IMG/VR virus record: IMGVR_UViG_3300019458_000020
Coordinates: 186,814 to 250,813 of that record
DNA: 64,000 bases
Reading direction: 5' to 3' (one strand)
Shown here: one piece after another, positions 14,225-44,626 of the stretch
How the letters are laid out: every line of letters starts with the position of its first letter
How positions within the stretch are numbered: the first letter of the stretch is position 1
The notes under the pieces: model-generated
Told to the model about the DNA's origin: nothing
The model's input: only the letters and a program-made list of their open reading frames with translations
Databases searched by the model: none
Translations under genes and position numbers: made by a program

Positions 14225-14431
14225 TTAAGCAACCTTGGTGAAATTACCAAAGGGATTCATTCCACTTTCCAGCATGGTGACTTGCCATTGGTTCGTGCAT
14301 TGGTCGAGCAACTTCTCATATTCGTCCTGTTCCGGTTCAGGTTGAGGAAACAAATCAAGTTGTTCAGTTGGAGTGATAGTCATAAGGTCTTTCAGGTCAG
14401 ACTCGGCAGAGATATTGGAGAAATCGTTCAT
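14225..14431 (-). CDS. hypothetical acidic protein
   Basis: ATG 6 nt after a TATAAT box. Confidence 0.6.
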   Translation of the reverse strand: MNDFSNISAESDLKDLMTITPTEQLDLFPQPEPEQDEYEKLLDQCTNQWQVTMLESGMNPFGNFTKVA

Positions 14432-14829
14432 GTAATTATTATACATTATCCCTTGTTGATGGCAAGAGAATCTTTTAACTTAATCCATCAAAGGAAGCGA
14501 CCTGTAGTAAGAGTCAAGGCTCTCCTTTGTCCGATGGGCCTTGAAGGTTCTCGTATCAGGACTACCATAGTTGCCGAATATGATAGGTTTCTCCTATCTT
14601 TAGGTCTTTGATTTTCATAGGTATTAGTGCCGTTCTCCACTGGCAACGATTTCACCAAGTTGTCATTCGTCAAGAGATTTGATACGTTTCTTTGCCGTTT
14701 GTTCGTCATCCTTCCGACCAGCTTTGTATGACTCCAACTGAATTTTACGAATCTGTTTGGCGAAGTTCTTATTGCCAATGCAGTGGTGAAGCTTAAATTC
14801 CCTTGCCCAATCGTCTGGAGTGTTCATAT

Positions 14830-15036
14830 TCAATCCATTGATTCCTGAGACGTAATACGATACCATTTACGGCCGCGGTTTAAGCCACGGTCTTTAGGCG
14901 TCATACCAACGGTGTCTTCATTGAAGATTGGCCAAAGGGCGGATCCTTCGAGTGAATGCATATCGCCTTTCTCAATTTTTTCATCTGGCCCAAGTTCTCG
15001 AAAATGGAATAGAATTTTCATCTTAGAATCCTCCAA
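14830..15036 (-). CDS. hypothetical protein
   Basis: Short ORF in the early region. Confidence 0.5.
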   Translation of the reverse strand: MEDSKMKILFHFRELGPDEKIEKGDMHSLEGSALWPIFNEDTVGMTPKDRGLNRGRKWYRITSQESMD

Positions 15037-15353
15037 GGAATGTTAGTACCCACTGTGAACCACGTTTCTGAACTTTAAAGGTGGCCGTTGACCCGGTGAA
15101 ATACCGAAGGAAATCGGTCAAGTCTTGAAGATCATCGAAGAAAATTTTACCGTTCATGATGGTATATTATCCTTTTTATGTTTATTTGTCAAGCACGATT
15201 TTAATTTCTTTCAAAGTTTCTCTAATGGGTTTAAGGTCAACGAATACCGCACGAATGGCAACCATTTATGATACCTGCCAAGGTGGATTCAATCCTTTTC
15301 AATAAGGCTAGTTCATGAAAAGGAGAACGGGGATTCCTTTCCCCGTGATTGAC

Positions 15354-15650
15354 TTAGGCAGCGATGAGCTGCTTGACGTGTTCGGGCATAGGACCATCGG
15401 ATTCGCTCCAAACCCTTCGAGCAATGGCCTTGATTTCTGCCACGTAGTTATCGCCCATTTCAAACGTGCCGTAAGTGGCATCGGACTTAGCAGCCACGAA
15501 CCATCTGGAATAAGGATTTCCATTTTCCTTTTCAGGTGTTTGATATTTTTTCAACACCAAATATGTAATAGTTCCCAGATCTCCAGCATAGCCATGCCAA
15601 ATCTCGTAGGGATTTGAAATTGGCCGAGTTTTTCCACACAGATTTTTCAT
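15354..15650 (-). CDS. hypothetical protein
   Basis: Own promoter; PYEIW..YLVLKKYQ..RWFVAAKS..FEMGD..YV. Confidence 0.75.
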   Translation of the reverse strand: MKNLCGKTRPISNPYEIWHGYAGDLGTITYLVLKKYQTPEKENGNPYSRWFVAAKSDATYGTFEMGDNYVAEIKAIARRVWSESDGPMPEHVKQLIAA

Positions 15651-15756
15651 ATAAAGATACTAATTCATTTTCATATTTATGTCAAATGATTTTTGGCTGT
15701 TTTGTGGCATTACTTACAAATTTTTAATTGATTTGGTGATTTCCATGTCATCATAG

Positions 15757-16017
15757 TTATTCCTCAATAATATTCTGAGGAAGCTTGATAAGTGCCGACT
15801 TTCGGATGCCACAGAACTTGGCTACTTTCTTCTCGCTAATGGCATGAACTGTGAGATATTGCTTGTCGTAATGACTTCCAACAGGCTTACCAGCTAAGTA
15901 TTCCTTTTGACGAATAATCAAACGAACAACGGCACCCCGTTTATATTCGCTTGTAACGACATACAAATCGTCACTTAGAAGACAGTTTTCGCCGTCAAAG
16001 GCCTTGATGAATTTCAT
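15757..16017 (-). CDS. hypothetical protein
   Basis: ORF in the early region. Confidence 0.6.
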   Translation of the reverse strand: MKFIKAFDGENCLLSDDLYVVTSEYKRGAVVRLIIRQKEYLAGKPVGSHYDKQYLTVHAISEKKVAKFCGIRKSALIKLPQNIIEE

Positions 16018-16054
16018 GGAATGTTGAGAGAATCTATCCTATTTAACTGGCTTG

Positions 16055-16426
16055 TCAAGCGGTCAGTTTGAATTCTGTTTGGGTATGTTCAACCAGATGG
16101 GCAAAGTCTTCATTATTGACATCGACGTGAACGTTTTGTGCTTCAGTGGCCGTGAACCGAAAACCAGGCGAACAACCACAAAAACAACCGGAATACTGAC
16201 TCCATGTAAAATCCTTGGCGACAATCCCTTTCTTCTTGAATTCATCAATGACTTGAGGAATGACAACCTTACGATACAGGTTGTAAGGGCGAGAATGCCG
16301 ATTCATCAGGTTTTCAAGGATTGTCTCACCTTTGGACCGGATATACAGACGGCAGTTGAGGGTGGAGAACCTCTGTTTTCGGGCAGAACGGGATGTCGGA
16401 TTTAGCGGACGAAATTTAATGTTCAT
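16055..16426 (-). CDS. hypothetical protein
   Basis: Own promoter; WSQYSGCFCGCSPGF motif. Confidence 0.75.
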   Translation of the reverse strand: MNIKFRPLNPTSRSARKQRFSTLNCRLYIRSKGETILENLMNRHSRPYNLYRKVVIPQVIDEFKKKGIVAKDFTWSQYSGCFCGCSPGFRFTATEAQNVHVDVNNEDFAHLVEHTQTEFKLTA

Positions 16427-16496
16427 GGTTGGAATATATCAAACAATTGTGTGTTGTCAAGTCTTGACATTACAAAAAGATACGGTAATCTACCAC

Positions 16497-16967
16497 ATGA
16501 CGAAATCGCGGAAAGTTGTCATCGGTTTGGTAGTCTTCACGGTGTTAGTGTTCATCGTTGAAAAGACATCAGTGAACCGTGTTAGGGTGTCAGGTGAGAG
16601 TATGCTTCCGACTCTTTCACATGGACAAAAGGGATTGTGTAACAAGTTCAGTCTTTACTTTCGGACATCATCGAGGGGCGACATCATCATCTATAATGAC
16701 CCTACTTCCGAAAACACACTAGTAGTCAAACGAGTTATAGGCATCCCCGGTGATTCAATTTTGATTGTCAATGGAAAGGTTTTTCTGAACGGAAGATTTC
16801 TTTCTGAACCATATCTGCCACGTTATACCTATACCTATGGTGATGGTGAATGGTTTTTAGGAAAAAATGAATACTTTGCCCTTGGTGACAATCGCAACAA
16901 CAGTATGGATTGCAGGGATTACGGACCAATTAACATCAAACGGATAAAAGGTTTCTTTGTTCCTTGA
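16497..16967 (+). CDS. lepB: signal peptidase I (S26A)
   Basis: N-terminal TM helix, VSGESMLPTL (catalytic Ser), VVKRVIGIPGD (catalytic Lys), GDNRNNSMDCR. Confidence 0.92.
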   Translation: MTKSRKVVIGLVVFTVLVFIVEKTSVNRVRVSGESMLPTLSHGQKGLCNKFSLYFRTSSRGDIIIYNDPTSENTLVVKRVIGIPGDSILIVNGKVFLNGRFLSEPYLPRYTYTYGDGEWFLGKNEYFALGDNRNNSMDCRDYGPINIKRIKGFFVP

Positions 16968-17136
16968 CAATTTTTCAAACAACAGTAATTTCCAACTATG
17001 TCTAAATACAAATGTATCTATCGTCGGACAGACTTGGACTCGTGACATGATTGGATATAATTTACGATCACGGTCAAATGGAATACTTTTGGTGAATTTG
17101 ATTTGACAAACAAAAGAAAACGAATATCATACAAAT

Positions 17137-17376
17137 ATGAATACTACATGGGAAACTACAATTGAAGACGTTGAAAGAGTGTTAGAAGCTCATGGTCTTG
17201 ACCAGCTTGATGTTGTCGAAGTTCATGATGAATTGGACAAGGATGCGATTGAAGACGCTGCTCTTTACGGTGATGAGATGGAAGAACAGACTTATTACGC
17301 CCTTCAGGAAATTGAATTTCAGCTCCGGCAGCAGGGTCACATCACCACCGAAACAACCAAGTTTCCCATCCCATGA
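17137..17376 (+). CDS. hypothetical acidic protein
   Basis: Own promoter upstream. Confidence 0.65.
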   Translation: MNTTWETTIEDVERVLEAHGLDQLDVVEVHDELDKDAIEDAALYGDEMEEQTYYALQEIEFQLRQQGHITTETTKFPIP

Positions 17377-17479
17377 ATCTGAAAACCAAACTCACGCTGA
17401 TTTTCGTGGCCTGTGTGTTGATTGCTTACGTAATCGTGGCCAAGTATCTTCCGAAAGGCAAACCGAACTGGATTGGAAT

Positions 17480-17626
17480 ATGAATCATCCTTTTATCATT
17501 GCTCTGGCAATCATCTGGGGATGTGCCACCATTGGTGCCTGTGTAACCAAAAAGCACGAATGTTATCACTCCGCATTTTGGATCAGCTTTTTGATGGGAT
17601 TTGGTTACTTCTTGTTCAAGGTTTAA
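17480..17626 (+). CDS. small two-helix membrane protein
   Basis: MNHPFIIALAIIWG...FWISFLMGFGYFLFKV. Confidence 0.55.
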   Translation: MNHPFIIALAIIWGCATIGACVTKKHECYHSAFWISFLMGFGYFLFKV

Positions 17627-17671
17627 AAAATTAATCCTTGACATTTCTACAAAAAATTGTAGAGTGTGGAC

Positions 17672-17920
17672 ATGAATAACACAATTGTTAAAGGTTCGGT
17701 TGTAAAACACACTGCCAAGTCGGACTTCTCTCGTGCCGGAATCAAAACGGGCGACACGAGATATTACCGAGTGACAGCAACGTTCAAAAACACCGCCAAT
17801 ATCGGTGGAATCTTCAACGGCATCATCTACTTCAAGAGTGTGCCGTTGACGGAACTCGTTGAGGCCCACGATGAATGGTATGACAAGTGGCAGCAAAGTG
17901 AGACGTATCAATCAATGTAA
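17672..17920 (+). CDS. hypothetical protein
   Basis: ATG 6 nt after the -10 box; hairpin terminator at about 17928-17947. Confidence 0.7.
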   Translation: MNNTIVKGSVVKHTAKSDFSRAGIKTGDTRYYRVTATFKNTANIGGIFNGIIYFKSVPLTELVEAHDEWYDKWQQSETYQSM

Positions 17921-17978
17921 AACGAACAGGGGCAAGGATGCCCCTTGACTTCTTTCTAAAACAAAGTGATCTTTTATC

Positions 17979-18053
17979 TGGCCCTTAACTTAAAGGTGAA
18001 GTAGTGTGCTCATAACACAACGAGTGTAGGTTCGAGTCCTACAGGGCCAACCA
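17979..18053 (+). tRNA. tRNA(CAU), probably Ile2 (lysidine type)
   Basis: TGGCCCT/AGGGCCA acceptor, CTCATAA loop, GGTTCGAGTCC, ACCA. Confidence 0.85.
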
Positions 18054-18762
18054 TTTCATGTAAACCTGCATGCGTTTCAGCATGACAATTTTTACATACA
18101 CAAATACACTTATCCAACTCAACCTTTAACATTTCCCACGAATAGGTTCTAAGATTGGATATGTTGAATTCTTTCTTGGTTGGGTCAATATGATGAAAAT
18201 CCAATGCACCGATGTATTTGTTATATCCACAAATCATACATTTGCCACCTTTGTAATCTACACACTTTTGTTTCCGTTCGGTTTGCTTTTTTAATGAAAT
18301 TCTGTTATTACACCGTTTACACCAATAATGAAATTTTCCATTTTTCTTTAGATAGAAATTTTCATTTGTCAATGTCTTTTTTTGATTACACTGAGAACAA
18401 GTTTTATATCCTTCTTCTATCTCTTTCTTAATTTTTGTTCTTAATATTGTCCATTGTGGATTGGTTTTCAAACCATAAATGTTTAACCAATAACGGATAA
18501 CACATTGGCTACAATTTAGTTCACGGGCCATTTTATGAGTAGAATAATTTTGTCCAATGTATGTTTCTAATTGACATTTTTGAATCTTTAATGGTTCTCT
18601 TTTGTGTATAGTTTTTAACCCTAACTTTCTAAAATGACCCTTTATTGTTGACCAAGGCACCATCATTTCGTTGGCTACTTGTTTTGTAGTATATCCATTA
18701 TTGATGAAAGATTGATACTTGTCTTTTAACTCATTAGTTATATTTATGGTAATAACTATCAA
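18010..18762 (-). CDS. HNH homing endonuclease with HTH repeats
   Basis: CSQC..WCKRC; KCMICGY..ALDFHH..CVCKNCHAETH; convergent on the tRNA. Confidence 0.85.
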   Translation of the reverse strand: MIVITINITNELKDKYQSFINNGYTTKQVANEMMVPWSTIKGHFRKLGLKTIHKREPLKIQKCQLETYIGQNYSTHKMARELNCSQCVIRYWLNIYGLKTNPQWTILRTKIKKEIEEGYKTCSQCNQKKTLTNENFYLKKNGKFHYWCKRCNNRISLKKQTERKQKCVDYKGGKCMICGYNKYIGALDFHHIDPTKKEFNISNLRTYSWEMLKVELDKCICVCKNCHAETHAGLHEMVGPVGLEPTLVVL

Positions 18763-18858
18763 ATTAATGGTTCAAACATCATGATTTCTGTTGACAACCA
18801 TATAAAAAAGTGTTAAGATTCGTTTCGTGAAAATTAAATTTATCATAACGGAATACCC

Positions 18859-19047
18859 ATGATGCCGTCAAGTGTTATCAAACGTAAGCAGAAAATCGCC
18901 CAAATGGACCGTGAGACTGCGATGGAATATTTCCGTCCATTGGAACTTGACCAAATCAAATCAATGGAAAGGCGTCATTGTGTGAAGCCTGGAACCTATA
19001 CCCGATTTTATCGGATGGTGACTTGCCAAACCGAAGATTCGCAGTAA
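18859..19047 (+). CDS. hypothetical protein
   Basis: Downstream of a TTGACA promoter. Confidence 0.55.
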   Translation: MMPSSVIKRKQKIAQMDRETAMEYFRPLELDQIKSMERRHCVKPGTYTRFYRMVTCQTEDSQ

Positions 19048-19056
19048 AGTTTTTAT

Positions 19057-19416
19057 ATGAACATGTCATCATTTTTAACACCGGCGGGGCCAAAGGCTCC
19101 GGTTAATAAATTCTGGTTTACACTTGGCGTTTTACTTGCCATTGTAGTCGTCGTTGGTTCGTTATATCTCGGACTTTGGCTCTGCCTGATTGGTGGAATC
19201 GTTCAAGTCGTTGAAGCTTGTAAGTCGAATCCTGTTTCTTCGATGGGTATTGCCTTGGGATTTCTTCGATTCATCGCAACGGGAATCGTCAGTTGGGGCA
19301 GCTTTTTCATTGGTTGTGGATTAACCAGTTGGTGTTTCGGACGTGCGTATGCTGCCAGAAACAAGCAGAAGCTAGACCATCTGAATAAAGTTCAAAATGA
19401 ATTTTTCGGAAAGTGA
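19057..19416 (+). CDS. hypothetical membrane protein
   Basis: Two to three hydrophobic segments. Confidence 0.7.
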   Translation: MNMSSFLTPAGPKAPVNKFWFTLGVLLAIVVVVGSLYLGLWLCLIGGIVQVVEACKSNPVSSMGIALGFLRFIATGIVSWGSFFIGCGLTSWCFGRAYAARNKQKLDHLNKVQNEFFGK

Positions 19417-19606
19417 CGATTTGCGTAGGCTGTTCGCCGAAGGCAAACCAGTGGTGACATACGAAGAGGTTGAACAATGCGGCCTGGCCTATATTAAAGA
19501 CGTTGACGTAGGGCCAGAATATGCCTTTGAACTGGCTTCCAACGACTACGCTCCTGATTATGGTTATGTGGATAATGGTTGTGAACAATTTGTGAAAGTC
19601 GCTTGA
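19397..19606 (+). CDS. hypothetical protein
   Basis: Overlaps the upstream gene as in an operon. Confidence 0.6.
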   Translation: MNFSESDDLRRLFAEGKPVVTYEEVEQCGLAYIKDVDVGPEYAFELASNDYAPDYGYVDNGCEQFVKVA

Positions 19607-19636
19607 CAATCTAAATTGTTTTGATATATTCTCGCC

Positions 19637-19861
19637 ATGATTAGTTTCAAAAATGATACCGAACTGACGCTCGTTACTTCTTTTGACGAGAAAACCGACA
19701 CCATTACCGGCGAAGAGACGGAAACGTTTAAGGCCGGCGAACCTGTTGACGCTGATATTATCGACGAAAACGAAACTAAAGGTGAAATGTTCGTTGACTT
19801 GCAGTTTGGTGACGGATCTGTTGCCTTTGGTGTTCAACGCGAATGCTTTGATGTCCTATGA
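19637..19861 (+). CDS. hypothetical acidic protein
   Basis: ATG 6 nt after the -10 box. Confidence 0.7.
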   Translation: MISFKNDTELTLVTSFDEKTDTITGEETETFKAGEPVDADIIDENETKGEMFVDLQFGDGSVAFGVQRECFDVL

Positions 19862-20370
19862 TTCAACTAGAAGCACAATTCACGTCTGGCGTTGACGGGT
19901 TCTCCGCTAACCCTCTTACCTATACACAACTCGCCAGAACGCAACGGGCCGCAATCTATGAACGTTCCCGTGATGGTAAGCCAAAGGATTACGAAGTCTT
20001 TATCATCAAAGTTGACCTGAAGGGAAAACAAATCTTTCAGCAAGTTCTGGAGGATGACCGGGAACGATATCCAACGGCAAGCCAGTTCGGATTCATTGCA
20101 TGGTCTTTCAACAACAAAGACGTTGCCTTTGAACGGTTTAAGGAGTTAAACGAAGAATTGAATGCTCCTGAAGAATCCAAAGTCGAAAAAATCATTGTCA
20201 TTCCTTCTGGTGAGTTTAGTGTGGCTCAACTTGCTGACCATAACAAGGTTTCCTATATAGAAGCCTCTGCTTTTGTCAAGGAAAATCTTGATAAAACCAT
20301 CAAGTTCGTTCGCCAATTCAAGAAAGAGGGACAACGTGGAAAGCCGGCGAACTTCTACACGAAAATATAA
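19858..20370 (+). CDS. hypothetical protein with C-terminal winged-helix-like segment
   Basis: EFSVAQLA...QRGKPANFY. Confidence 0.65.
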   Translation: MIQLEAQFTSGVDGFSANPLTYTQLARTQRAAIYERSRDGKPKDYEVFIIKVDLKGKQIFQQVLEDDRERYPTASQFGFIAWSFNNKDVAFERFKELNEELNAPEESKVEKIIVIPSGEFSVAQLADHNKVSYIEASAFVKENLDKTIKFVRQFKKEGQRGKPANFYTKI

Positions 20371-20466
20371 AAACGATTTGACATTCTGAAAAGAATGTTG
20401 TAACTTGAATCTCGGTCGAAAGACTGTTGACAAAATCTCTTAATAAGAGATCACATAGACAGTGAA

Positions 20467-20537
20467 GATTCTGATAGTTTAGTTAGAAGAACACTGCCGT
20501 TGAGGCGGGGGCACGGGTGCAATTCCCGTTCAGATCA
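20467..20537 (+). ncRNA. degenerate tRNA-like element, no CCA
   Basis: GATTCTGA/TCAGATC acceptor with bulge, D-like arm, CTGCC-GTTGA-GGCGG, ACGGG-TGCAATT-CCCGT. Confidence 0.55.
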
Positions 20538-20591
20538 AGTAACTGGAACCACTTGAGCGTAGGCTCCGTGAAATCGTGTTCATTCAAAGAA

Positions 20592-20692
20592 GCCGGGAGC
20601 AGAGATGGTCAAATGGTTCGGACAGCCAGTGCCGAACCAATTTGGGCGAACCTCTCACCTTTAGTTTCGCCGCTAAGGGAAAAGCTCCCGGC
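20592..20692 (+). ncRNA. candidate structured RNA with possible pseudoknot
   Basis: GCCGGGAGC/GCTCCCGGC closing stem; TGGTTCGG/CCGAACCA; GGCGAA could pair with loop TTCGCC. Confidence 0.55.
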
Positions 20693-20737
20693 ACATTTTT
20701 CTTGACAATCTGTTTTGATTTGGTATAATTATATCAA

Positions 20738-20884
20738 ATGAAGAACGTGATGAAAACTCAGATGGAAGTCTATAAATCCATCCGTAAGCCCTTCGCTCCC
20801 TCTGTTAAGGTTGAGCGTCCGAACAAGGGTGCTGGTTATCGTCGTCACCGTGGAAACTGGCAGAAATGGGTTGACAACGAGTAA
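20738..20884 (+). CDS. 48-aa ArfA-like basic peptide (below the ORF-track cutoff)
   Basis: MKNVMKTQMEVYKSIRKPFAPSVKVERPNKGAGYRRHRGNWQKWVDNE; TTGACA-16-TATAAT promoter directly upstream. Confidence 0.6.
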   Translation: MKNVMKTQMEVYKSIRKPFAPSVKVERPNKGAGYRRHRGNWQKWVDNE

Positions 20885-20889
20885 ATCGG

Positions 20890-21090
20890 TTGTATAATAA
20901 CCACCAAATGAAACTTCGAGCAACGGTAATGTATAACGAAGGCAGAGGCCACTGGCAGGCAGTTTTGCGTGGTGGAACGGCTTTCAACATTCCAGATGGT
21001 CAAGCTGATTTTCTCCGTCATGGTGACGAGATTTATATTAGCATTCATGCCAATTATACCGATTGTGACGTAGTAAAGAAGGCAGCATGA
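20890..21090 (+). CDS. hypothetical protein
   Basis: Probable ATG at 20908 after a TATAAT box. Confidence 0.55.
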   Translation: MYNNHQMKLRATVMYNEGRGHWQAVLRGGTAFNIPDGQADFLRHGDEIYISIHANYTDCDVVKKAA

Positions 21091-21407: not shown

Positions 21408-21412
21408 TTTAA

Positions 21413-22215: not shown

Positions 22216-22218
22216 GTT

Positions 22219-36580: not shown

Positions 36581-36610
36581 TATACGACAGAATATAAAAA
36601 CGTCAAGTCT

Positions 36611-36787: not shown

Positions 36788-36848
36788 ATAACGAACATAT
36801 CACAAATAAAATAATTGTCAATCGCATTCTTGTTATACATATCAGATA

Positions 36849-37681: not shown

Positions 37682-37715
37682 AAGAGCCCTATGATATCCA
37701 TTTCACCATCAGACC
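37641..37715 (-). tRNA. tRNA-Arg(UCU)
   Basis: GGGCT-CTTCTAA-AGCTT, GGTTCGAATCC, ACCA. Confidence 0.93.
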
Positions 37716-37716
37716 A

Positions 37717-37998
37717 TTAAATCGTAAATTGTGATTGATGAGGATGATAGGAAACTTCATGATGAACATATTCAATCAATGAGTTGTTGCTATCACGTTC
37801 AGCAAGGAAAAGCTTACCCTTATACTTGACAAGCACATGACCACCATTAACCGTAAGCTTCACAGCCGCCGCTATGGCTTCTCTTAGCTTCGTTTCCTCC
37901 ATCACATCCTGTAGTTGAAACAGGTTTCTCTGGGCTGTCGGCCCTGAGTTCTTTAGGCTGTTCTGAAACACTATCACCAATTGAGCTACTGGCGTCAT
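37717..37998 (-). CDS. hypothetical protein (start uncertain, probably near 37903)
   Basis: C-terminal half looks coding and overlaps the next ORF. Confidence 0.4.
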   Translation of the reverse strand: MTPVAQLVIVFQNSLKNSGPTAQRNLFQLQDVMEETKLREAIAAAVKLTVNGGHVLVKYKGKLFLAERDSNNSLIEYVHHEVSYHPHQSQFTI

Positions 37999-38809
37999 TT
38001 GATGGAGAAGATAACAGACTTTTTTTAGTTGTCAAGACGAATTTAGGTTCACCAATAGTAATTCTTGTAAACCTAAAGTTCTCATTATTAAGAGTATCAA
38101 TCAAATAATATTTGTCTTCATCAACAATGACAATGCCATCAAAAGATTTTAGAATATTTGTCTTGATTTTTTCGGCAAATGAGTCATAAGTAAAGTTCTC
38201 AAAATCTATGGCATCAGAAAACCATTTGTCAAACTTAAATTCGTGTGAATGCTGTTTTAATTTGACAAGAAAATTACCTAATGCTCTTAATTTAGATTCA
38301 TTTAATTCATTTGGTTTATCCATGATGCCAATTGCATTCCATTCGATTGTTAACTCATGAGAATAATAATGCGTCAATGCTCTGTCGATAATATATAAGT
38401 TTTTTCTCAGACAAGTGATTTCGTTCATCGTGGCCGCATTATTATAAAAACGTATATCCTTTTTCTGTTCTTTGAATTCATATCGTTTGTTATCTATGAT
38501 AGAATCACAGCCTGTTATTCTTTTGGCCTTTATAGATTGCGGTATAGTGAGCAAACACCAAGCTTCTCCACGTCCCATTTGATTACGTTTTATATGCTTG
38601 TGAATTAATTTCTCCAATTCAGAATGATTCTCATTGGTTTCTTTTACAAGTTCTTCTATGGAGTTAAATTGAGGGATTTCAGTTATGTTATATAACTGAA
38701 GTTCAGCAACAAGGTTGGATATTAAATCAGTACGTGAGAAACCCATCTTGGTTTCTAAACGGTCCTTGATGAAAGTATATAATTCTTCCGGCCCCATCAC
38801 TGGGGACAA
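37847..38809 (-). CDS. putative PD-(D/E)xK nuclease-like protein
   Basis: GRGEAW..CDSIIDNKRYEFK. Confidence 0.5.
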   Translation of the reverse strand: MSPVMGPEELYTFIKDRLETKMGFSRTDLISNLVAELQLYNITEIPQFNSIEELVKETNENHSELEKLIHKHIKRNQMGRGEAWCLLTIPQSIKAKRITGCDSIIDNKRYEFKEQKKDIRFYNNAATMNEITCLRKNLYIIDRALTHYYSHELTIEWNAIGIMDKPNELNESKLRALGNFLVKLKQHSHEFKFDKWFSDAIDFENFTYDSFAEKIKTNILKSFDGIVIVDEDKYYLIDTLNNENFRFTRITIGEPKFVLTTKKSLLSSPSNDASSSIGDSVSEQPKELRADSPEKPVSTTGCDGGNEAKRSHSGGCEAYG

Positions 38810-38859
38810 ATAGATTACAAAATGCTCAATCTCAATTTATTTTAACAATTTGAGCTTTC

Positions 38860-40284
38860 TTATATACTTCTGCCCATCAGGAATCTGAAAAACTTCATTC
38901 CTTCAACCATGTCACCATCATTTAAAATACTCAGGTTGGTGATTTTAGAATTAAGACGATGACAAATTTGCTCTTCACGGGTTCCAGCAGCGAAGAGAAT
39001 TCGTTGGTAACACTTTGTTAATCCACCTTGACGATGAATTCTGCCGAGAACTTGAAGTAATTGGATAGCGGAGTAATTTGGATTGATGATTGTAGCACGG
39101 GGATGTTTACCGGTTAAATCATGAAGATTAATCGATTGCCCACCAGCAGCATTGTTAGCAATGATGATTCTTTTCCTGTCTGCATTGAAATCGGCAACGT
39201 CCTGAATTCTATCATTCACACTCTGCCCACCATAAATCAATCCAATCTTATCACGAAACTTTTTCTTGGAAGACAGACGGCGATTAATCAATTCAATGGT
39301 ATTTGTGAAGTTTACAAACACGCCAACAGACTTTCCTTCATCAAACAAGTCTTCAATCATTTCCAAAATTGTAGGCACCTTGAGCAATTCAATTTCACGA
39401 CGAGCTTTGATGATTACTGCCAAGATATGTTCGGCATACTTGGCTGTTTGTTCTTGAAGTCGAGCAATCTCATTTTCCATCCAGTCATATCTGGCTTGAA
39501 TCTTATCGGCGTTATCCATAGCGTATGCCTTGACAACGATTTGATTCTCTGGAAACAACGTACCCATTCCTTCACGGGTCAAACGAGACGATATCTTTTG
39601 AGTATCAAACAGATTTGTGTGACACAACTTCATTTTGGCTTGTGCCTCTTTATCATCATTATCGAAATACTGTGCTCCCCATTTACCTACCCATTGAGCA
39701 CCGTAATCAATACAAAAGTCATTGAAATCCGAAAGCTTATGGAGATTGACAGTATAACCAAACGCCTTCATCTCAAGAGGATTTGTGGCTTGAGTGGCAG
39801 ACAACAGAAGACAACGATATCCTTGACGTTTCAAGGCAATCATCAATCCTGCATTAAGACTTGATGGACCTTTACACTTATGAGATTCATCCAAGATAAC
39901 CAAACATCCTGGCGGCAGCTTCAATTCAGCAGTAAGAAACCTTTCCACCTTGTGCGTTTTCTTTGTGGAACGTATCAACACATCGTCGGCCTTTGGCTTC
40001 TTATACTTCAAATATTTGGTATTACCACGACAAAGCTTTTCGTAATTGATGATAATGGTTGGCTTCAATCCATACAAAGCCAATGTAGCAACCCAGTCAG
40101 GCATTACCATCTTCGGGCAAATAACAACGATTGGACAATTCATTCCCCTTGCGATACAAGAGGCGACGTGAGTTTTTCCACAACCTGTTTCCGACAAGTC
40201 AGCAGCCACACCATTAAGGTAAAGGCTGTCAATGAGAGTCATTGCATGGGCCTTTTGAGGGTCAAGAAGTCCGGTAAGATTCAT
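38860..40284 (-). CDS. superfamily II (SNF2/DEAD-like) helicase
   Basis: SETGCGKT, ILDESH, SAT, QVLGRIHR. Confidence 0.92.
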   Translation of the reverse strand: MNLTGLLDPQKAHAMTLIDSLYLNGVAADLSETGCGKTHVASCIARGMNCPIVVICPKMVMPDWVATLALYGLKPTIIINYEKLCRGNTKYLKYKKPKADDVLIRSTKKTHKVERFLTAELKLPPGCLVILDESHKCKGPSSLNAGLMIALKRQGYRCLLLSATQATNPLEMKAFGYTVNLHKLSDFNDFCIDYGAQWVGKWGAQYFDNDDKEAQAKMKLCHTNLFDTQKISSRLTREGMGTLFPENQIVVKAYAMDNADKIQARYDWMENEIARLQEQTAKYAEHILAVIIKARREIELLKVPTILEMIEDLFDEGKSVGVFVNFTNTIELINRRLSSKKKFRDKIGLIYGGQSVNDRIQDVADFNADRKRIIIANNAAGGQSINLHDLTGKHPRATIINPNYSAIQLLQVLGRIHRQGGLTKCYQRILFAAGTREEQICHRLNSKITNLSILNDGDMVEGMKFFRFLMGRSI

Positions 40285-40323
40285 GTTCGGAGATTATACT
40301 ATCAATTAAGAGAATGTCAAGCG

Positions 40324-40578
40324 TTAGTCATTGAAGACCACACACTCCACGAAAACACCTTGAACCGAAGTAACATATACCCACATTTGAAGTTCATTGT
40401 CTTCATCATCCGAACGAATTTCGAGGCCTTTGCCTGGCGGAAATTGACGATTCCACGGGTCAAGAAAACCATTCGCCATCAAGTCAGAATCCTCAGCAAC
40501 GTATCGGCCAGTTGTCTCTGTAAAGGACCAGAGTTTATTCTTAATGGGATACTTCTTATTGATTTCAGTTGGTTTCAT
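40324..40578 (-). CDS. hypothetical protein
   Basis: ORF in operon. Confidence 0.65.
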   Translation of the reverse strand: MKPTEINKKYPIKNKLWSFTETTGRYVAEDSDLMANGFLDPWNRQFPPGKGLEIRSDDEDNELQMWVYVTSVQGVFVECVVFND

Positions 40579-40763
40579 TTTGAATCGGTGACTTCAACCG
40601 TTTCGATGGTTAAATCTTGAATGTCTGCCTTGTCTTTCAATTTTTTATCCAAACAATTCATATCCAACCGAACATTGTCCATGTATTCATCTAGATTCAA
40701 ATCAGAATCGGCGGACAGAATCACGTTCACCGTCAGGGTAGCATAGATTTTTCTCATAATCAA
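40575..40763 (-). CDS. hypothetical protein
   Basis: ATGA overlap; own promoter. Confidence 0.65.
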   Translation of the reverse strand: MIMRKIYATLTVNVILSADSDLNLDEYMDNVRLDMNCLDKKLKDKADIQDLTIETVEVTDSK

Positions 40764-40795
40764 AATATATCACTTATTATCCATTTGGCAAAAAG

Positions 40796-40825
40796 AAAAG
40801 GGGAGGTTTTTAGCCTCCCCTTTTT
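40796..40825. terminator. bidirectional intrinsic terminator
   Basis: aaaaggggagg-tttttag-cctcccctttt. Confidence 0.8.
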
Positions 40826-40846
40826 GCTTCCCAAGCCTGATTTCAA

Positions 40847-41278
40847 TTAGGCAGTCGCTTCAACAGCAATGCCTTCGGGAGCGGTGACGATGACAGCCGG
40901 GGCGGGTGTCGGCTCAGCGGCGATAATCTCACCAGCGGGCAACGTCACAGCGGGCCTGACGGTAGCCGGAGCCAGAACAGCGGCCTTCTTGGCCGGCTTC
41001 GTGGTACGCTTGGCCTTGACCGGAGCGTTGGTCTTCAGCATGTAACGGAACGACGGGCGACCGACTTCTTTGGTCTTCAGGTCTTCCGAAAGACGGATGA
41101 GCGTCTTGGAAGCCACACCGGCCTCAATCTTGTTGCGAACGGTCAACTCACACACGTGCGGGTTGAGACTCACGACAGCGGCGATGGTGAAGGCGCCACG
41201 GGGGAACTTGATGACTTTGGCGGGAGCGCCAGGACCACGCTTGATTTCGGACTTCGTATTACGATTCTTGTTCTTCAT
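40847..41278 (-). CDS. basic winged-helix-like protein with Ala/Pro-rich tail
   Basis: AFTIAAVV..ELTVRNKI..GRPSFRY; visibly GC-rich codon usage. Confidence 0.75.
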   Translation of the reverse strand: MKNKNRNTKSEIKRGPGAPAKVIKFPRGAFTIAAVVSLNPHVCELTVRNKIEAGVASKTLIRLSEDLKTKEVGRPSFRYMLKTNAPVKAKRTTKPAKKAAVLAPATVRPAVTLPAGEIIAAEPTPAPAVIVTAPEGIAVEATA

Positions 41279-41577
41279 ATCAGTTTTCTTTCTACTAACG
41301 TTCTTTTTTTTGTTTGTTAATTCATTGATTCAACTATTGAATCAACTTTCGATATACCATCATAATTCATTTCTATAAGAAGTCAAACAGAATTTTCAAA
41401 ATTTTCTACTTTTCTTTTCTGAAAGAATCTTTCGTACAAATAACGTTTTCGACTTGACTTTTATAAAAAGTATGTTATAGTATTCACGTTGATGAGGTCG
41501 TCCCGAGGAACGCCGGGGGCACCAAGAGTAGGGGACCAGGGGATCGTTATAAACTTTAACGTTAACCTATTTAATAC

Positions 41578-41606
41578 AAAAAATCGCCAACCTTTCGATT
41601 GGCGAT
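41578..41606. terminator. intrinsic terminator
   Basis: aaaaaatcgccaa-cctttcga-ttggcgatt. Confidence 0.7.
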
Positions 41607-41625
41607 TGGAATGACAGCCTCCGAA

Positions 41626-41988
41626 TCAATCCCACCAGATTCTATAAACAGGAATGTTTTGTCCACCGAAGTCAATCGTTCTCAAATGACATTCATTCGC
41701 TTTGAGTGTATCCTTTAGAACACACGTATCCACTGTGATTGGAGAAATAACATACACACAAACCGATCCTTCCCTTGCCAAGATAACCTTGGAACCATTC
41801 GGCAACCGATTGAGAAGTTCTGGCCGAAATGCGTTATATCTGACAACAGTTCGTTCCAAAATCTCAACAGCTACCGACACCGAACAATATTCATTGGCAC
41901 GAAAGTTAAGATTCCGTTCATGCTTAGTTCCATTACAATCGGAGTAAGCATTCCGAACATCACGAAGCAAAGTTTGATTTAATTTCAT
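41626..41988 (-). CDS. hypothetical protein
   Basis: ATG 6 nt after TAAACT. Confidence 0.75.
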   Translation of the reverse strand: MKLNQTLLRDVRNAYSDCNGTKHERNLNFRANEYCSVSVAVEILERTVVRYNAFRPELLNRLPNGSKVILAREGSVCVYVISPITVDTCVLKDTLKANECHLRTIDFGGQNIPVYRIWWD

Positions 41989-42018
41989 GGTGAGAGTTTA
42001 CTGTTTTTTATACAAATG

Positions 42019-42396
42019 TCAAGCAGGTTTCTTAAAGAAAGCTGCAGTTCGATCTTCAAACTCAGCCATTCTCTGTGCAACTTGTGTGGGAACCATTAAC
42101 TTGTTTCCCTCTTGGAAAACACCAGGAAATGAATATCCATCCATGTAATCGATGAAAGCAACTTCCGTAAATCGCTTGTTGACTTTCAGAACGATATAAT
42201 GGGCATAACCATCACAAACATTCCACTTCAGATGTTTTCCTGGCTTCAAACCCTTTCCAGCAATCTTCTGAAGGGTTTCAACCAATTGCCAAAGTTGTTC
42301 GTCGTATTCACGCCATTTACCATCGTGGAGATTGTCACGAGCAACACCAGCAAGACGATTGATTTCTGTAATTGTATCAGTAATGAGATTTTTCAT
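42019..42396 (-). CDS. hypothetical protein
   Basis: Own promoter. Confidence 0.75.
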   Translation of the reverse strand: MKNLITDTITEINRLAGVARDNLHDGKWREYDEQLWQLVETLQKIAGKGLKPGKHLKWNVCDGYAHYIVLKVNKRFTEVAFIDYMDGYSFPGVFQEGNKLMVPTQVAQRMAEFEDRTAAFFKKPA

Positions 42397-42578
42397 AGAA
42401 AGGAGTTTACTATATTAAGGGTCAATGGCAAGTCAGACTTTCCATTTTCTATAACATTTTGTGCATTCGCAACGCCCACGTAAGATTGCTCTTCCAAAGA
42501 TATTCCAATGACCACCATCACGAGAGAAATGATGTCCACGATGGAACAAAGTGCATTTGATTGTTTGCCAAATCTTTT

Positions 42579-42890
42579 TCATGCAATCGGCTTCGGGTCA
42601 CCACCAAAACAATCGTCAATCCAAGAATTGGCTTCTTCCCTCGGCGTTACTCCGTTATGGTCTGCCATCTCGTAAATGAATCCACGGTCATCCTGAGCAA
42701 AAAGATACTTTACCATATCCTTACGAGTCATCTTCTTTTTCGTAAAAATATATGTAGAGTCGTCACTTCCTTCCGTTGCTGGATTCACATAAACAAAGAT
42801 ACCAGCAGACCGAAGAATCGGTGCAATCTCTTCAATTACCGAATCGGCAGATTCTTTCCAATCAAAGTTAAGTTCAATGGGGAATTTCAT
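42579..42890 (-). CDS. hypothetical protein
   Basis: ATGA overlap. Confidence 0.7.
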   Translation of the reverse strand: MKFPIELNFDWKESADSVIEEIAPILRSAGIFVYVNPATEGSDDSTYIFTKKKMTRKDMVKYLFAQDDRGFIYEMADHNGVTPREEANSWIDDCFGGDPKPIA

Positions 42891-43279
42891 AGGTCATCAA
42901 GTGTGTGTTGTGGAGGAATCGTCACGTTATATTTTTCTTTCACGAATGACCGAACCACTTCACAATAACGTTGAACGTCTTTTTCAAGGTCCATCGTCAA
43001 GTCACTCATAAGAAACGGAATCAATTCACCACCAACATAATCGCCAGCCTCGTTTGTCAATTGAACAGGAATTGAATCTTCACATTCCCAAAATGGAGTT
43101 GCCCAAATGTAATCGAAATGGCCCTCTTTGGATTCTCCGACGGCGTTCCAACAAAGGCAACCGGTCATATCTTCCACCCAACAATGTTTGCTTTCCATGA
43201 AAGCAATTCGATGAATGAGAACATTGATGTAATCGTAAACCAAATCTTTGTAGTCAACAGCGTTTTCAGTAACGTTCAT
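42887..43279 (-). CDS. hypothetical protein
   Basis: ATG 6 nt after TAAACT. Confidence 0.75.
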   Translation of the reverse strand: MNVTENAVDYKDLVYDYINVLIHRIAFMESKHCWVEDMTGCLCWNAVGESKEGHFDYIWATPFWECEDSIPVQLTNEAGDYVGGELIPFLMSDLTMDLEKDVQRYCEVVRSFVKEKYNVTIPPQHTLDDL

Positions 43280-43328
43280 GGTGTGAGTTTACCGTTTTTT
43301 ATAAAATTGTCAAGTGAATTTTATCGTT

Positions 43329-43592
43329 TCAAGGAAACAAGTAAAGTTCAGAATCAGGCACGGAACCTGTTGGACCTACGTAGTTTCCCCAACGGTCAGG
43401 CCACTCGGATTTATTAAATTCTGCTTCATCCGTTCCAACCATTTCATCATTGACATTGTAGTAACCACCAAACCAGAAGACTCTGAGATATGGGGGATAC
43501 GATGCATCTGGTTCAACATTAACCACTACGACCAATCTTTTGTGGCCTGTTTCGTCGAACCATTCCCAAATGCCTGGCTTGTCGGGCTTCAT
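43329..43592 (-). CDS. hypothetical protein (paralog of 33791)
   Basis: KPDKPGIWEWF N-terminus. Confidence 0.65.
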   Translation of the reverse strand: MKPDKPGIWEWFDETGHKRLVVVVNVEPDASYPPYLRVFWFGGYYNVNDEMVGTDEAEFNKSEWPDRWGNYVGPTGSVPDSELYLFP

Positions 43593-43636
43593 TTGTCAAG
43601 AAAAGCGTTTATATGATTTATTTATGCGCAATGGCA

Positions 43637-43951
43637 TTACTTTATCAAACCCAAGGCCCTCTTCTCTTCAGCCGTCAACTTCTTGAGAGCTTGAGTTCGG
43701 AGTTCAGCACGTTCGTTAATCTTTCGACGTTCATCACGTTCCTTGTGTTCTTTCCACCACGGTTGAAGGCCGGAAATCTGGTCGATGTTCAAAGGAACAA
43801 TAACATTATTTTTCTCCAGAACCGTCATTACTTCACAAAGCAAATGAGTCACCAAATCCAATTCCTTTTTATATGGTTGAGTCAGTTTCTTGTTTGCAGC
43901 TTTCTTTGCAGCTGCAATTTCTTCAGGAGATTCGTAGTATTGACATGGCAT
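43637..43951 (-). CDS. hypothetical protein
   Basis: MPCQYYESP..THLLCEVM..WWKEHKERD. Confidence 0.7.
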   Translation of the reverse strand: MPCQYYESPEEIAAAKKAANKKLTQPYKKELDLVTHLLCEVMTVLEKNNVIVPLNIDQISGLQPWWKEHKERDERRKINERAELRTQALKKLTAEEKRALGLIK

Positions 43952-43988
43952 AGATTTTATTTGTTAAATCAGTTGTGTGGATTATACT

Positions 43989-44626
43989 TCAACTTTTTAT
44001 ATTTGTCAAACGAATAAGCGCTGCTTTCCTCTTATTATTCCAGCAACCCATACAAAGAATCGTAACACCGTCAGAATCAAGAAAAGACATGTTCCCGATG
44101 CAATCCCAGTTATGAATAAGAGAATTGCAAACGTCACAACTCTCAACAAGGCCGCTGCCATTTGGAGCCACCTGCATGTCTTCTTCGAGAATCTTTGCAT
44201 TGAATGCGTTCACTCCATAATATTACGAATAATATTAAGAATGTCAAACAGAATCATCCGACAAACCCTCATTTCCACTCTTTTCTTTCCGTGGTCAATC
44301 GATGCCAGAGCTTCATCCTCCGTCTCATATCTCATGGAATAGATTGTGCCTGTATTCAGATTCAAAACTCGCCATTCCTTCAGCCTGCCACAATAAACGG
44401 CTGTTTCGTATATCATTCTGTTCTTAGGCATAATTCACATTTGTTCCCGTGGAGTCAACCCAACACGTTGCCGACTGCGATGATCCACGATTTTCATACC
44501 AGAAAAACCGGCGTCAACAATTTCATTGGTCAATAATCCATGACCAACCTTGTTGTTAGCAAACCGGTTTCCACGCCAAGAGAAGTGGTTTTTGTATCTG
44601 TGAACAATGGTCTGTTTCTTATTCAT
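43989..44626 (-). CDS. three short hypothetical ORFs (43989-44213, 44210-44431, 44435-44626)
   Basis: Abutting ORFs with promoter-proximal starts. Confidence 0.55.

What the first reader, a model, noticed from the sequence alone, without database searches (positions are those of the whole stretch)
14431..44213. Early genes appear systematically leaderless
Seen: in at least 14 genes the start codon lies 5-6 nt after the -10 hexamer with no SD. Examples: TATAAT-ATCACC-ATG 30979, TATATT-CCTACC-ATG 31467, TATATT-CTCGCC-ATG 19637, TACGGT-TTCGAC-ATG 24237, TAAAAT-AACATC-ATG 25712, TAAGGT-TGTCGC-ATG 32936, TAAACT-CTCACC-ATG 41988, TAAACT-CACACC-ATG 43279, TATATT-CCAACC-ATG 16426. Established: sigma70 initiates about 6-7 nt past the -10 box, and leaderless mRNAs are read by 70S ribosomes. 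Inference: a one-gene-one-promoter leaderless programme, possibly resistant to shutoff of canonical initiation and served by the phage initiator tRNA.
Basis: partly seen in the sequence, partly recalled or inferred. Interest (0 to 1): 0.6.

Follow-up and report, generated by a model that had tools for sequence, protein, structure and literature searches.

The report
Leaderless genes across a jumbo phage
In this uncultivated giant phage, about 34 small genes each start directly at the predicted transcription start of their own consensus promoter, so their messages would have no leader; this is a known way of expressing genes, used here unusually densely and probably matched to a host that does not use ribosome-binding sites.

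Summary
In window 14.4-44.6 kb, 34 ORFs start with ATG 5-9 nt (19 at exactly 6 nt) after a TTGACA-N16/17-TAnnnT promoter. The whole contig has 43 such sites against 1 for the reversed pattern. Pfam N-terminal alignments and orthologues in two other IMG/VR contigs confirm the start codons, and those contigs keep the promoter-to-ATG distance.

- Lack of Shine-Dalgarno is genome-wide, not specific to early genes.
- A second, late-type motif (TATTTATA) also sits 3-8 nt from start codons here. Relatives carry the same motif with 17-34 nt leaders.
- The layout is therefore better read as adaptation to an SD-scarce, leaderless-friendly host than as a programme to escape shut-off.

The host may be Verrucomicrobiota. 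The phage ClpX nests in that phylum, and many of its genomes show the same promoter-ATG signature.

An initiator-type tRNA is present. No RNA data exist, because the contig is only found in cave metagenome DNA runs, so the transcription start sites remain predicted.

This is a new, very dense example of a known mechanism.

The parts
14188..45320 (.). Putative early block. About 55-60 small ORFs on both strands, 6 tRNA genes and about 45 sigma70-type promoters. GC is 0.41-0.46 against 0.31-0.37 in the flanks.
   Evidence: 'Early' is inferred from promoter type and gene content, not measured.
30945..30981 (+). Promoter TTGACA-N16-TATAAT, then 6 nt, then ATG 30979 (78-aa ORF). Perfect 12/12 consensus.
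31433..31469 (+). Promoter TTGACA-N16-TATATT with a TG extension, then 6 nt, then ATG 31467 (210-aa ORF). The whole promoter and N6 are near-identical in the relative L019.
32901..32938 (+). Promoter TTGACA-N17-TAAGGT, then 6 nt, then ATG 32936 (283-aa GP88-family protein).
   Evidence: In one search, Pfam GP88 aligns residue 6 to profile position 3, fixing the N-terminus. Relatives L019, L026/27 and L032 keep a promoter 6-10 nt upstream.
24202..24239 (+). Promoter TTGACT-N17-TACGGT, then 6 nt, then ATG 24237 (364-aa T4 Rnl1-like RNA ligase).
   Evidence: The orthologue in L019 conserves the protein from Met1 and also has d=6.
16424..16499 (.). Divergent pair. ATG 16426 (-, 123 aa, d=6) and ATG 16497 (+, 156-aa S26 signal-peptidase homologue, d=5). 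The 70-bp gap between them is filled by two back-to-back promoters, leaving no room for leaders.
   Evidence: In one search, Peptidase_S26 aligns residue 7 to profile position 4.
19603..19639 (+). Promoter TTGACA-N16-TATATT, then 6 nt, then ATG 19637 (74 aa).
25677..25714 (+). Promoter TTGACA-N17-TAAAAT, then 6 nt, then ATG 25712 (71 aa).
40282..40320 (-). Promoter TTGACA-N16-TATAAT, then 8 nt, then ATG 40284 (474-aa SNF2/DEAD helicase). The predicted leader is 2 nt.
41986..42022 (-). Promoter TTGACA-N16-TAAACT, then 6 nt, then ATG 41988 (120 aa).
43277..43313 (-). Promoter TTGACA-N16-TAAACT, then 6 nt, then ATG 43279 (130 aa).
14429..14465 (-). Promoter TTGCCA-N16-TATAAT, then 6 nt, then ATG 14431 (68 aa). 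This is the first case in the block.
35868..35942 (-). Initiator-type tRNA(CAT). It has a T1.T72 mismatch, A11:T24, G30G31:C39C40 and a CTCATAA loop. A consensus promoter lies at 36070-36097 (-).
   Evidence: Comparison with E. coli tRNA-fMet is from memory only.
17979..18053 (+). Second tRNA(CAT) with a paired 1:72, so it is elongator Met or Ile2 type, not initiator.
3985..3999 (-). Example inside the window of the second, late-type motif: TATTTAT, then 5 nt, then ATG 3987 (125-aa ORF). A similar case is at 11358-11371 (-, ATG 11360, d=4).
   Evidence: contig positions 190800 and 198173.
51673..52926 (-). Phage ClpX (417 aa), used here as a host marker.

Best explanation
The window is the last 64 kb of a 250.8-kb contig of an uncultivated T4-like jumbo phage. 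Its putative early block is expressed from about 45 strong, host-type (sigma70-like) promoters.

In 34 of these the -10 hexamer ends 5-9 nt before an ATG. RNA polymerase would then start at, or 1-3 nt before, the A of the start codon. The mRNAs would be leaderless and would be decoded by ribosomes that bind a 5'-terminal AUG with initiator tRNA, without any Shine-Dalgarno pairing.

This is not a special early-gene device. No gene class in the phage uses SD. A second, late-type promoter motif (TATTTATA, conserved in related phages) has also been moved up against start codons in this lineage.

The layout is therefore best read as adaptation of the whole phage to the expression signals of an SD-scarce host that handles leaderless mRNA well, possibly a member of Verrucomicrobiota.

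Shown: the sequence architecture, its statistics, its conservation, and the correctness of the start codons. Inferred: the TSS positions, the 'early' and 'late' timing, the translation mechanism, and the host.
For: Architecture and statistics:
- 43 sites against 1 for the reversed pattern.
- 26 of 41 promoters have their first ATG at 5-9 nt (p = 2e-18).
- 14 of 41 have it at exactly 6 nt (p = 5e-15).

The elements behave as promoters:
- The same elements precede tRNA genes.
- The -35 and -10 hexamers are conserved in orthologous positions of contig G001, while spacers and the N6 diverge.

The start codons are correct:
- Pfam S26 and GP88 profiles align from residues 6-7.
- Orthologue proteins are conserved from Met1, with third-position changes. 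Identity by codon position is 0.68, 0.76 and 0.50.

Signatures of the TSS and of leaderless mRNA:
- A at the 7th base after the -10 in 25 of 34.
- Pyrimidine at -1 in 28 of 34.
- ATG in 34 of 34.
- Second codon AAN in 27 of 34.
- The first 36 nt are less structured than internal windows: -2.5 against -4.8 kcal/mol (p = 2e-6).

The 70-bp divergent gap at 16427-16496 holds exactly two promoters.

Lineage conservation with a natural contrast:
- G001 has 21 sites against 0 control and G002 has 35 against 0.
- G004 has the same promoter type but 18-40-nt leaders with SD-like motifs.
- Flavobacterium phage immuto, Microcystis phage Mel-JY01 and LR756508 have 0-1 sites.

The feature is genome-wide:
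- SD cores occur at background frequency in 292 non-early genes.
- ATATTTAT-N2-9-ATG occurs 40 times against 5 control and precedes portal and other large genes.
- TATTTATA lies 17-34 nt upstream of terminase and portal in immuto and Mel-JY01, but the modal distance here is 3-8 nt.

Host hint:
- ClpX nests in a clade of 14 Verrucomicrobiota sequences with SH-aLRT 99.
- 26 of 121 sampled Verrucomicrobiota genomes carry at least 15 promoter-ATG sites (maxima 66/1 and 47/0). None of 61 Pseudomonadota do (maximum 11).
- In four such genomes d=5-9 outnumbers d=10-14 by 2.6-6 fold.
- SD-scarce Verrucomicrobia are published (PMC10783764).

The signature itself, a Pribnow box 6-8 nt from the start, is the accepted predictor of leaderless transcription (PMC6028130, PMC12340547).
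Against: - There is no transcript evidence. Only two DNA runs (cave metagenome) hold the sequence, so every TSS is predicted from E. coli-type rules.
- The host RNA polymerase is unknown. The dominant spacer is 16 nt, not 17.
- Read-through from upstream promoters is likely, because terminators are not enriched. The same genes may therefore also be translated from internal positions of longer RNAs.
- The late-type motif has not been shown to be a promoter, and its sample is small (13 of 31 at 3-8 nt).
- The host assignment rests on one gene on a long branch (0.77). The candidate phylum has GC 48-59% against 36% for the phage.
- My gene calls outside the block are crude.
Confidence: 0.72

Rival explanations
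1. The leaderless layout is an early-gene-specific programme that lets phage messages escape a phage-imposed shut-off of canonical (SD-dependent) initiation. It would be helped by the phage's own initiator tRNA.
For: - An initiator-type tRNA with its own consensus promoter lies in the block.
- Precedent: Thermus phage phiYS40 is reported to shift the IF2/IF3 balance in favour of its leaderless messages (review PMC3594737).
- The host is unknown, so an SD-using host is not excluded.
Against: - SD is absent from all gene classes of the phage, not only the early block.
- Late-type promoters also abut ATG, so there is no temporal contrast.
- No IF1, IF3, S1, S21 or sigma factor is found in the 250 kb available.
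- The candidate host phylum is itself SD-scarce and rich in the same signature (PMC10783764).
Confidence: 0.12
2. The hexamers are promoters, but the adjacent ATGs are not the real starts, or the hexamers are not the promoters that serve these genes. Real mRNAs would have ordinary leaders from upstream TSSs, or translation would begin at downstream codons.
For: - There are no RNA data.
- Terminators are scarce, so read-through transcripts with long 'leaders' must exist.
- In a genome without SD, start codons cannot be checked by RBS position.
Against: - Pfam profiles align from residues 6-7 of the promoter-adjacent ORFs.
- Orthologues are conserved as protein from Met1 onward.
- The distance is kept at 5-10 nt across diverged relatives, while the intervening bases change.
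- The distance histogram has a sharp mode at 6.
- The pyrimidine -1 / purine +1 preference fits a TSS.
Confidence: 0.08
3. The pattern is a chance or compositional artefact of an AT-rich genome.
For: AT-rich DNA gives many TAnnnT and ATG words. An AT-rich Clostridium genome gave 27 hits against 11 control.
Against: - 43 against 1 for the reversed pattern in the same DNA.
- p = 2e-18 and 5e-15.
- Clustering in one block.
- Conservation in G001 and G002.
Confidence: 0.01

Closest known systems
Leaderless genes with the -10 box adjacent to the ORF in Deinococcus-Thermus and Actinobacteria (GeneMarkS-2 'group C'; PMC6028130, PMC12340547)
   Same: The Pribnow box lies 6-8 nt from the start codon, there is no SD, the start is AUG, and transcription and translation start at the same nucleotide.
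   Different: - Those are cellular genomes of high GC, in which 25-60% of operons are leaderless and the remainder use SD.
- In Deinococcus the -10 alone suffices.
- Here the elements are full TTGACA/TAnnnT promoters in a phage. Hardly any protein-gene promoter in the block has an ordinary-length leader, and the rest of the genome has no SD either.
Thermus phages phiYS40 and P23-45
   Same: These are large lytic phages whose transcripts are mostly leaderless. phiYS40 is reported to favour leaderless translation through the IF2/IF3 balance (PMC3594737; the P23-45 details are from my own knowledge).
   Different: - There the leaderless class is middle/late, from -10-only promoters, in a host phylum already known for leaderless mRNAs.
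- Here the clearest class is the putative early one, with consensus -35 elements, and the host is unknown.
- There is no sequence relationship between these phages and this one.
Lambda cI mRNA from PRM and other single leaderless phage genes
   Same: A sigma70 promoter starts transcription at the A of the AUG, and the message is translated by 70S/IF2/fMet-tRNA (established knowledge; Brock et al. 2008, cited in PMC5312081).
   Different: Those are isolated genes in genomes that otherwise use SD. Here it is the rule for dozens of genes.
T4-type early (sigma70) and late (TATAAATA) promoter programme; relatives Flavobacterium phage immuto and Microcystis phage Mel-JY01
   Same: - A T4-like portal (55-57% identity to those phages).
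- A block of small genes with individual host-type promoters.
- A -35-less A/T octamer upstream of structural genes, shared with immuto and Mel-JY01.
   Different: - T4 and these relatives have leaders. The octamer lies 17-34 nt from the ATG in immuto and Mel-JY01, against 3-8 nt here.
- The relatives lack TTGACA-N16/17-TAnnnT promoters: 1-2 per 100 kb against 29 here.
- phiKZ and AR9, the jumbo phages with mapped TSSs, have no leaderless mRNAs (PMC8244752, PMC5312081).

Membership tests
Bacterial leaderless mRNA genes (promoter-adjacent start codon) | The -10 hexamer ends about 6-8 nt upstream of the start codon. | tested here: met
   34 genes have d=5-9 with the mode at 6 (19 genes). p = 5e-15 for d=6.
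Bacterial leaderless mRNA genes (promoter-adjacent start codon) | The mapped 5' end of the mRNA coincides with the start codon (5' UTR under about 5-10 nt). | not testable with these tools
   No RNA run holds the sequence; only two DNA runs from cave metagenomes do.
Bacterial leaderless mRNA genes (promoter-adjacent start codon) | AUG start codon and no Shine-Dalgarno sequence. | tested here: met
   ATG in 34 of 34. An SD core occurs in 1 of 59 early-block upstream regions, but absence of SD is genome-wide (11% against 8.6% background), so it is not discriminating.
Bacterial leaderless mRNA genes (promoter-adjacent start codon) | The adjacent ATG is the true N-terminus. | tested here: met
   Pfam S26 and GP88 align from residues 6-7. 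Orthologues are conserved from Met1 with synonymous changes. Tested for about 15 of the 34 genes.
Sigma70-type (housekeeping) promoter | -35 TTGACA, spacer 17 +/- 1, -10 TAnnnT, purine start about 7 nt downstream. | tested here: met
   The -35 has at most 1 mismatch in all 34. The spacer is 16 nt in 24 and 17 nt in 10. A TG extension is present in 12 of 34. A is at the 7th base in 25 of 34. Hexamers are conserved and spacers diverged in G001. Activity was not measured.
T4-type late promoter | A -35-less A/T-rich octamer at -10 upstream of structural genes, read by a phage gp55-type sigma. | tested here: inconclusive
   TATTTAT(A/T) lies upstream of portal and other large genes and is conserved upstream of terminase and portal in immuto and Mel-JY01. 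A gp55 homologue was not sought. Sigma70_r2 was not found.
Bacterial initiator tRNA | 1:72 mismatch, A11:U24, and three G:C pairs (29-31:39-41) in the anticodon stem. | tested here: inconclusive
   For the tRNA at 35868-35942 (-): T1.T72 mismatch is met and A11:T24 is met. Only two of the three G:C pairs are present, because 29:41 is T.C.
phiYS40-like manipulation of initiation factors | The phage changes the IF2/IF3 ratio or encodes initiation factors. | tested here: not met
   No IF3_C, IF1, S1 or S21 domain is found in the 250.8-kb contig, which is 74% complete, so absence is not proven. Host factor levels are not testable.
Bacteroidota phage (host with TAnnTTTG promoters) | Early promoters of -33 TTTG / -7 TAnnTTTG type. 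| tested here: not met
   TAnnTTTG is not enriched upstream of genes (7 against 5.3 expected). Early promoters are TTGACA/TAnnnT. The Flavobacterium phage relative lacks the pattern. Flavobacteria have only 5.5% leaderless mRNAs (PMC9723704).

The most novel reading that the evidence does not exclude
A lineage of uncultivated jumbo phages (G000, G001, G002) has converted both its host-dependent early promoters and its phage-specific late promoters to leaderless form. Its closest sequenced relatives keep 17-34-nt leaders. The cause would be that it infects Verrucomicrobiota, a phylum in which SD-independent, largely leaderless initiation from canonical sigma70 promoters may be common but has not been described experimentally. 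The phage would then be both a marker of, and a compact test-bed for, a major unrecognised leaderless translation regime. Its own initiator tRNA might help to bias initiation towards 5'-terminal AUGs.
Probability: 0.25. Interest if true: 0.7.

Novelty: new member of a known kind. Interest (0 to 1): 0.5.

Why it matters
If confirmed, this would be the densest set of leaderless genes seen in a phage. It comprises about 34 individually promoted early genes plus late genes, in a genome with no Shine-Dalgarno sites at all.

- It provides a natural comparison. Relatives carry the same late motif or the same early promoter type but have leaders, which shows that leader loss is an evolvable, lineage-specific trait.
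- It warns that standard gene callers and RBS-based start prediction will mis-annotate such phages.
- It points to Verrucomicrobiota as a phylum where leaderless expression deserves experimental TSS mapping.
- The short promoter-plus-ATG cassettes (about 37 bp) are ready-made parts for testing leaderless translation.

Tried and rejected
- Megablast of 10 kb of the block against 50,697 phage records found no match.
- RNA evidence was sought, but only two DNA runs (cave metagenome) hold the region. I therefore did not spend read laying, which could not show a TSS.
- TAG recoding, suggested by a tRNA(CTA), was rejected. Code 11 already gives 77% coverage. The only ORF joined across a TAG is antisense to the sheath gene.
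- A Bacteroidota host, suggested by portal similarity to Flavobacterium phages, was rejected as the simple answer. The promoter type is wrong and the relatives lack the pattern.
- 'One promoter, one terminator per gene' was rejected, because terminator-like sites are not enriched.
- Phage-encoded translation or transcription factors (S21, sigma70 region 2, IF3, IF1, S1) were not found in the contig.
- The nearest ClpX-bearing genomes (G005-G009) show only a weak signal for the pattern, 1-17 hits. The signal appears in other members of the phylum.
- A BLAST of 20 kb of the window against 301 genomes of the order of G006, done to look for CRISPR-spacer-like hits, listed only clpX similarity at 64-74%. 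It gave no host link.
- The original phiYS40 paper (PMC1885378) is not held, so that comparison rests on a review and on memory.
- My simple hexamer-based gene caller under-calls genes in the GC-richer early block. I therefore used promoter-anchored ORFs instead.

Full report
**What the window is.** The window is the last 64 kb (186,814-250,813) of a 250,813-bp IMG/VR viral contig judged 74% complete.
- It encodes a T4-type portal (with an intein), a tail sheath, a class II RNR and an SbcCD-like nuclease.
- It also encodes 41 tRNAs and a tmRNA.
- By portal protein, the nearest sequenced phages are Microcystis phage Mel-JY01 (57%) and Flavobacterium phage vB_FspM_immuto (55%).
- There is no nucleotide-level match among 50,697 phage records.
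- Only two DNA sequencing runs, both labelled cave metagenome, hold the sequence, and no RNA run does.

Each also has a -35 hexamer (TTGACA or one mismatch) 16-17 nt upstream of the -10, so these are complete consensus promoters.
- A systematic scan finds 34 ATG-initiated ORFs of at least 40 aa between 14431 and 44626 whose start lies 5-9 nt after the -10. The breakdown is d=6 in 19, d=5 in 2, d=7 in 4, d=8 in 4 and d=9 in 5.
- The exact pattern TTGACA-N16/17-TAnnnT-N5-9-ATG occurs 43 times in the contig, against once for the reversed pattern.
- Within the block, 26 of 41 exact promoters have their first ATG at 5-9 nt (8.4% expected, p = 2e-18). 14 have it at exactly 6 nt (p = 5e-15).
- Promoter density is about three times that of the rest of the genome.

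**The ATGs are real starts and the hexamers behave as promoters.**
- Pfam profiles align from the very N-terminus of the promoter-adjacent ORFs. Peptidase_S26 aligns residue 7 to profile position 4. GP88 aligns residue 6 to profile position 3.
- In contig G001 (locus L019, about 79% protein identity), 14 orthologues are conserved as protein from Met1 onward with mainly third-position differences. Identity by codon position is 0.68, 0.76 and 0.50.
- Upstream of those orthologues only the two hexamers are conserved. The spacer and the 5-10 nt before the ATG vary.
- The same promoter type precedes tRNA genes.
- The 70-bp gap between the divergent starts 16426 (-) and 16497 (+) is exactly filled by two back-to-back promoters.
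- Features expected of a transcription start and of leaderless mRNA are present:
  - A at the 7th base after the -10 in 25 of 34.
  - Pyrimidine at -1 in 28 of 34.
  - ATG in 34 of 34.
  - Second codon AAN in 27 of 34.
  - The first 36 nt are less structured than internal windows: -2.5 against -4.8 kcal/mol (p = 2e-6).
- With E. coli rules, the predicted 5' UTR is 0 nt for 22 genes and 1-3 nt for 10.

**Comparative evidence.** A search with the GP88-family protein brought in 30 related viral loci.
- Two independent contigs share the layout. G001 has 21 sites against 0 control. G002, a 78-kb contig with terminal repeats, has 35 against 0 and a TGTGnTAnnnT extended -10.
- G003 keeps the promoters but places ATG 9-11 nt downstream.
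- G004 has the same promoter type with 18-40-nt leaders containing SD-like AAGGAG or GGAG. This is a natural control showing that the promoter type does not force the layout.
- Immuto, Mel-JY01 and the 484-kb phage LR756508 have 0-1 sites.

- *Absence of SD is genome-wide.* Among 292 genes outside the block, a 4-mer SD core occurs in 11% of upstream regions, against 8.6% in random DNA.
- *A second motif also sits next to start codons.* ATATTTAT or TATTTAT(A/T), without a -35, gives 40 sites against 5 for the reversed pattern. It precedes the portal (d=8) and other large ORFs of 459, 762, 452 and 329 aa.
- *That motif looks like the group's late promoter.* The same octamer lies upstream of terminase, portal and the next gene in immuto and Mel-JY01, but 17-34 nt from the ATG there. 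Genome-wide, the modal distance is 3-8 nt here, 15-20 nt in immuto and 27-44 nt in Mel-JY01. The lineage seems to have lost leaders in both promoter classes.
- *'One gene, one promoter' is only partly true.* At least 11 genes in the block are operon-internal. Terminator-like hairpins are not enriched: 25 against 17.4 +/- 4.2.
- *No relevant factor is encoded in the available contig.* I found no IF1, IF3, S1, S21 or sigma70-region-2 protein.
- *The initiator tRNA exists.* The tRNA(CAT) at 35868-35942 (-) has a 1:72 mismatch, A11:T24 and two of the three diagnostic G:C pairs, and it has its own consensus promoter. The other tRNA(CAT) in the window is not of initiator type. A role in boosting leaderless initiation is plausible but untested.

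**Host.**
- The early promoters are not of the Bacteroidota type. TAnnTTTG is not enriched, and flavobacteria have only 5.5% leaderless mRNAs (PMC9723704).
- The phage ClpX (51673-52926, -) finds its best matches in Verrucomicrobiota. In a quick ML tree of 81 sequences it nests inside a clade of 14 Verrucomicrobiota with SH-aLRT 99, although it sits on a long branch.
- In a sample of 121 Verrucomicrobiota genomes, 26 carry at least 15 copies of the promoter-ATG pattern with few reversed-pattern hits. The maxima are 66/1, 47/0 and 33/0.
- None of 61 Pseudomonadota genomes reaches 15; the maximum is 11.
- In four high-count genomes, d=5-9 outnumbers d=10-14 by 2.6-6 fold. SD cores upstream of their long ORFs are near background (with crude starts).
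- Some Verrucomicrobia are already listed as SD-scarce (PMC10783764).
- Against this, those genomes have 48-59% GC and the phage has 36%. The 41 phage tRNAs could compensate for such a gap, but that is inference. I rate the host assignment at about 0.5.

**Comparison with what is known.** A Pribnow box 6-8 nt from the start is the accepted in-silico signature of bacterial leaderless transcription (GeneMarkS-2 group C, PMC6028130). It has been shown experimentally in Deinococcus (PMC12340547).
- Among phages, single leaderless genes such as lambda cI are classical.
- Thermus phage phiYS40 makes most middle/late mRNAs leaderless and is reported to shift IF2/IF3 (PMC3594737).
- The jumbo phages with mapped TSSs have none. 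phiKZ shows no leaderless transcript (PMC8244752), and AR9 has 26-491-nt leaders (PMC5312081).
- The mechanism is therefore known.
- What is new:
  - The density of the feature.
  - Full consensus -35/-10 promoters in a putative early block.
  - The parallel shortening at a second promoter class.
  - The total absence of SD.
  - The possible verrucomicrobial context.

**Limits.** All TSSs, the 'early' and 'late' labels and the translation mechanism are inferred. The contig is incomplete. My gene calls outside the block are approximate. The comparison with E. coli tRNA-fMet and the details of P23-45 and phiYS40 rest partly on memory.

Noticed in passing
window 8136-8211 (-): A tRNA with anticodon CTA, which would read TAG. 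TAG ends only 14 of 278 long ORFs in the contig. However, there is no sign of in-frame TAG recoding: the one ORF joined across a TAG is antisense to the sheath gene.
   Followed up: partly
window 10429-10836 (-): A phage-encoded one-piece tmRNA (Rfam RF00023, 107.5 bits) with an unusually long predicted tag ending in AVAA.
   Followed up: no
contig 160-183 kb (loci L017, L018) and window 5046-5308: 41 tRNA genes in all, most of them in one minus-strand block just upstream of the window. All three tRNA(CAT) genes that I inspected encode their CCA end.
   Followed up: no
window 51673-52926 (-): A full-length ClpX (zinc finger plus AAA+ domain) of apparent verrucomicrobial origin. It has up to 74% nucleotide identity to clpX of genomes in the order of G006.
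   Followed up: yes
window 54783-55613 (-), 24237-25331 (+), 47512-48105 (-); L012:10469-12649 (+): An RNA-repair and tRNA-maturation set: a Thg1-like tRNA-His guanylyltransferase, a T4 Rnl1-like RNA ligase, a second RNA-ligase fragment, and a CCA-adding enzyme fused to a GNAT domain.
   Followed up: no
L010:1834-5133 (-) and L014:6420-9539 (-): Inteins with HNH/NUMOD3 endonuclease domains interrupt both the class II ribonucleotide reductase and the T4-type portal protein.
   Followed up: no
window 14000-44000 against the flanks: The promoter-rich block is 5-10 points richer in G+C (0.41-0.46) than the flanking minus-strand gene arrays (0.31-0.37), and GC skew changes sign there.
   Followed up: no
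whole contig, position -1 of start codons: T precedes the ATG in 65-70% of genes outside the early block, whether they are tightly packed or preceded by a gap. In the leaderless early set it is C (19) or T (9). This may be a start-context preference of the host. It remains unexplained.
   Followed up: partly
genomes G114, G111, G039, G044 (Verrucomicrobiota sample): Many Verrucomicrobiota genomes carry tens of exact TTGACA-N16/17-TAnnnT promoters 5-9 nt from an ATG, up to 66 against 1 control. This suggests widespread leaderless genes in part of that phylum. I found no paper describing it.
   Followed up: partly
window 16992-17003 (+) and 14187 (-): Consensus promoters that are followed at 6 nt by an ATG opening only a very short ORF (under 35 aa), or by no ORF at all. 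They could drive small peptides or non-coding RNAs.
   Followed up: no
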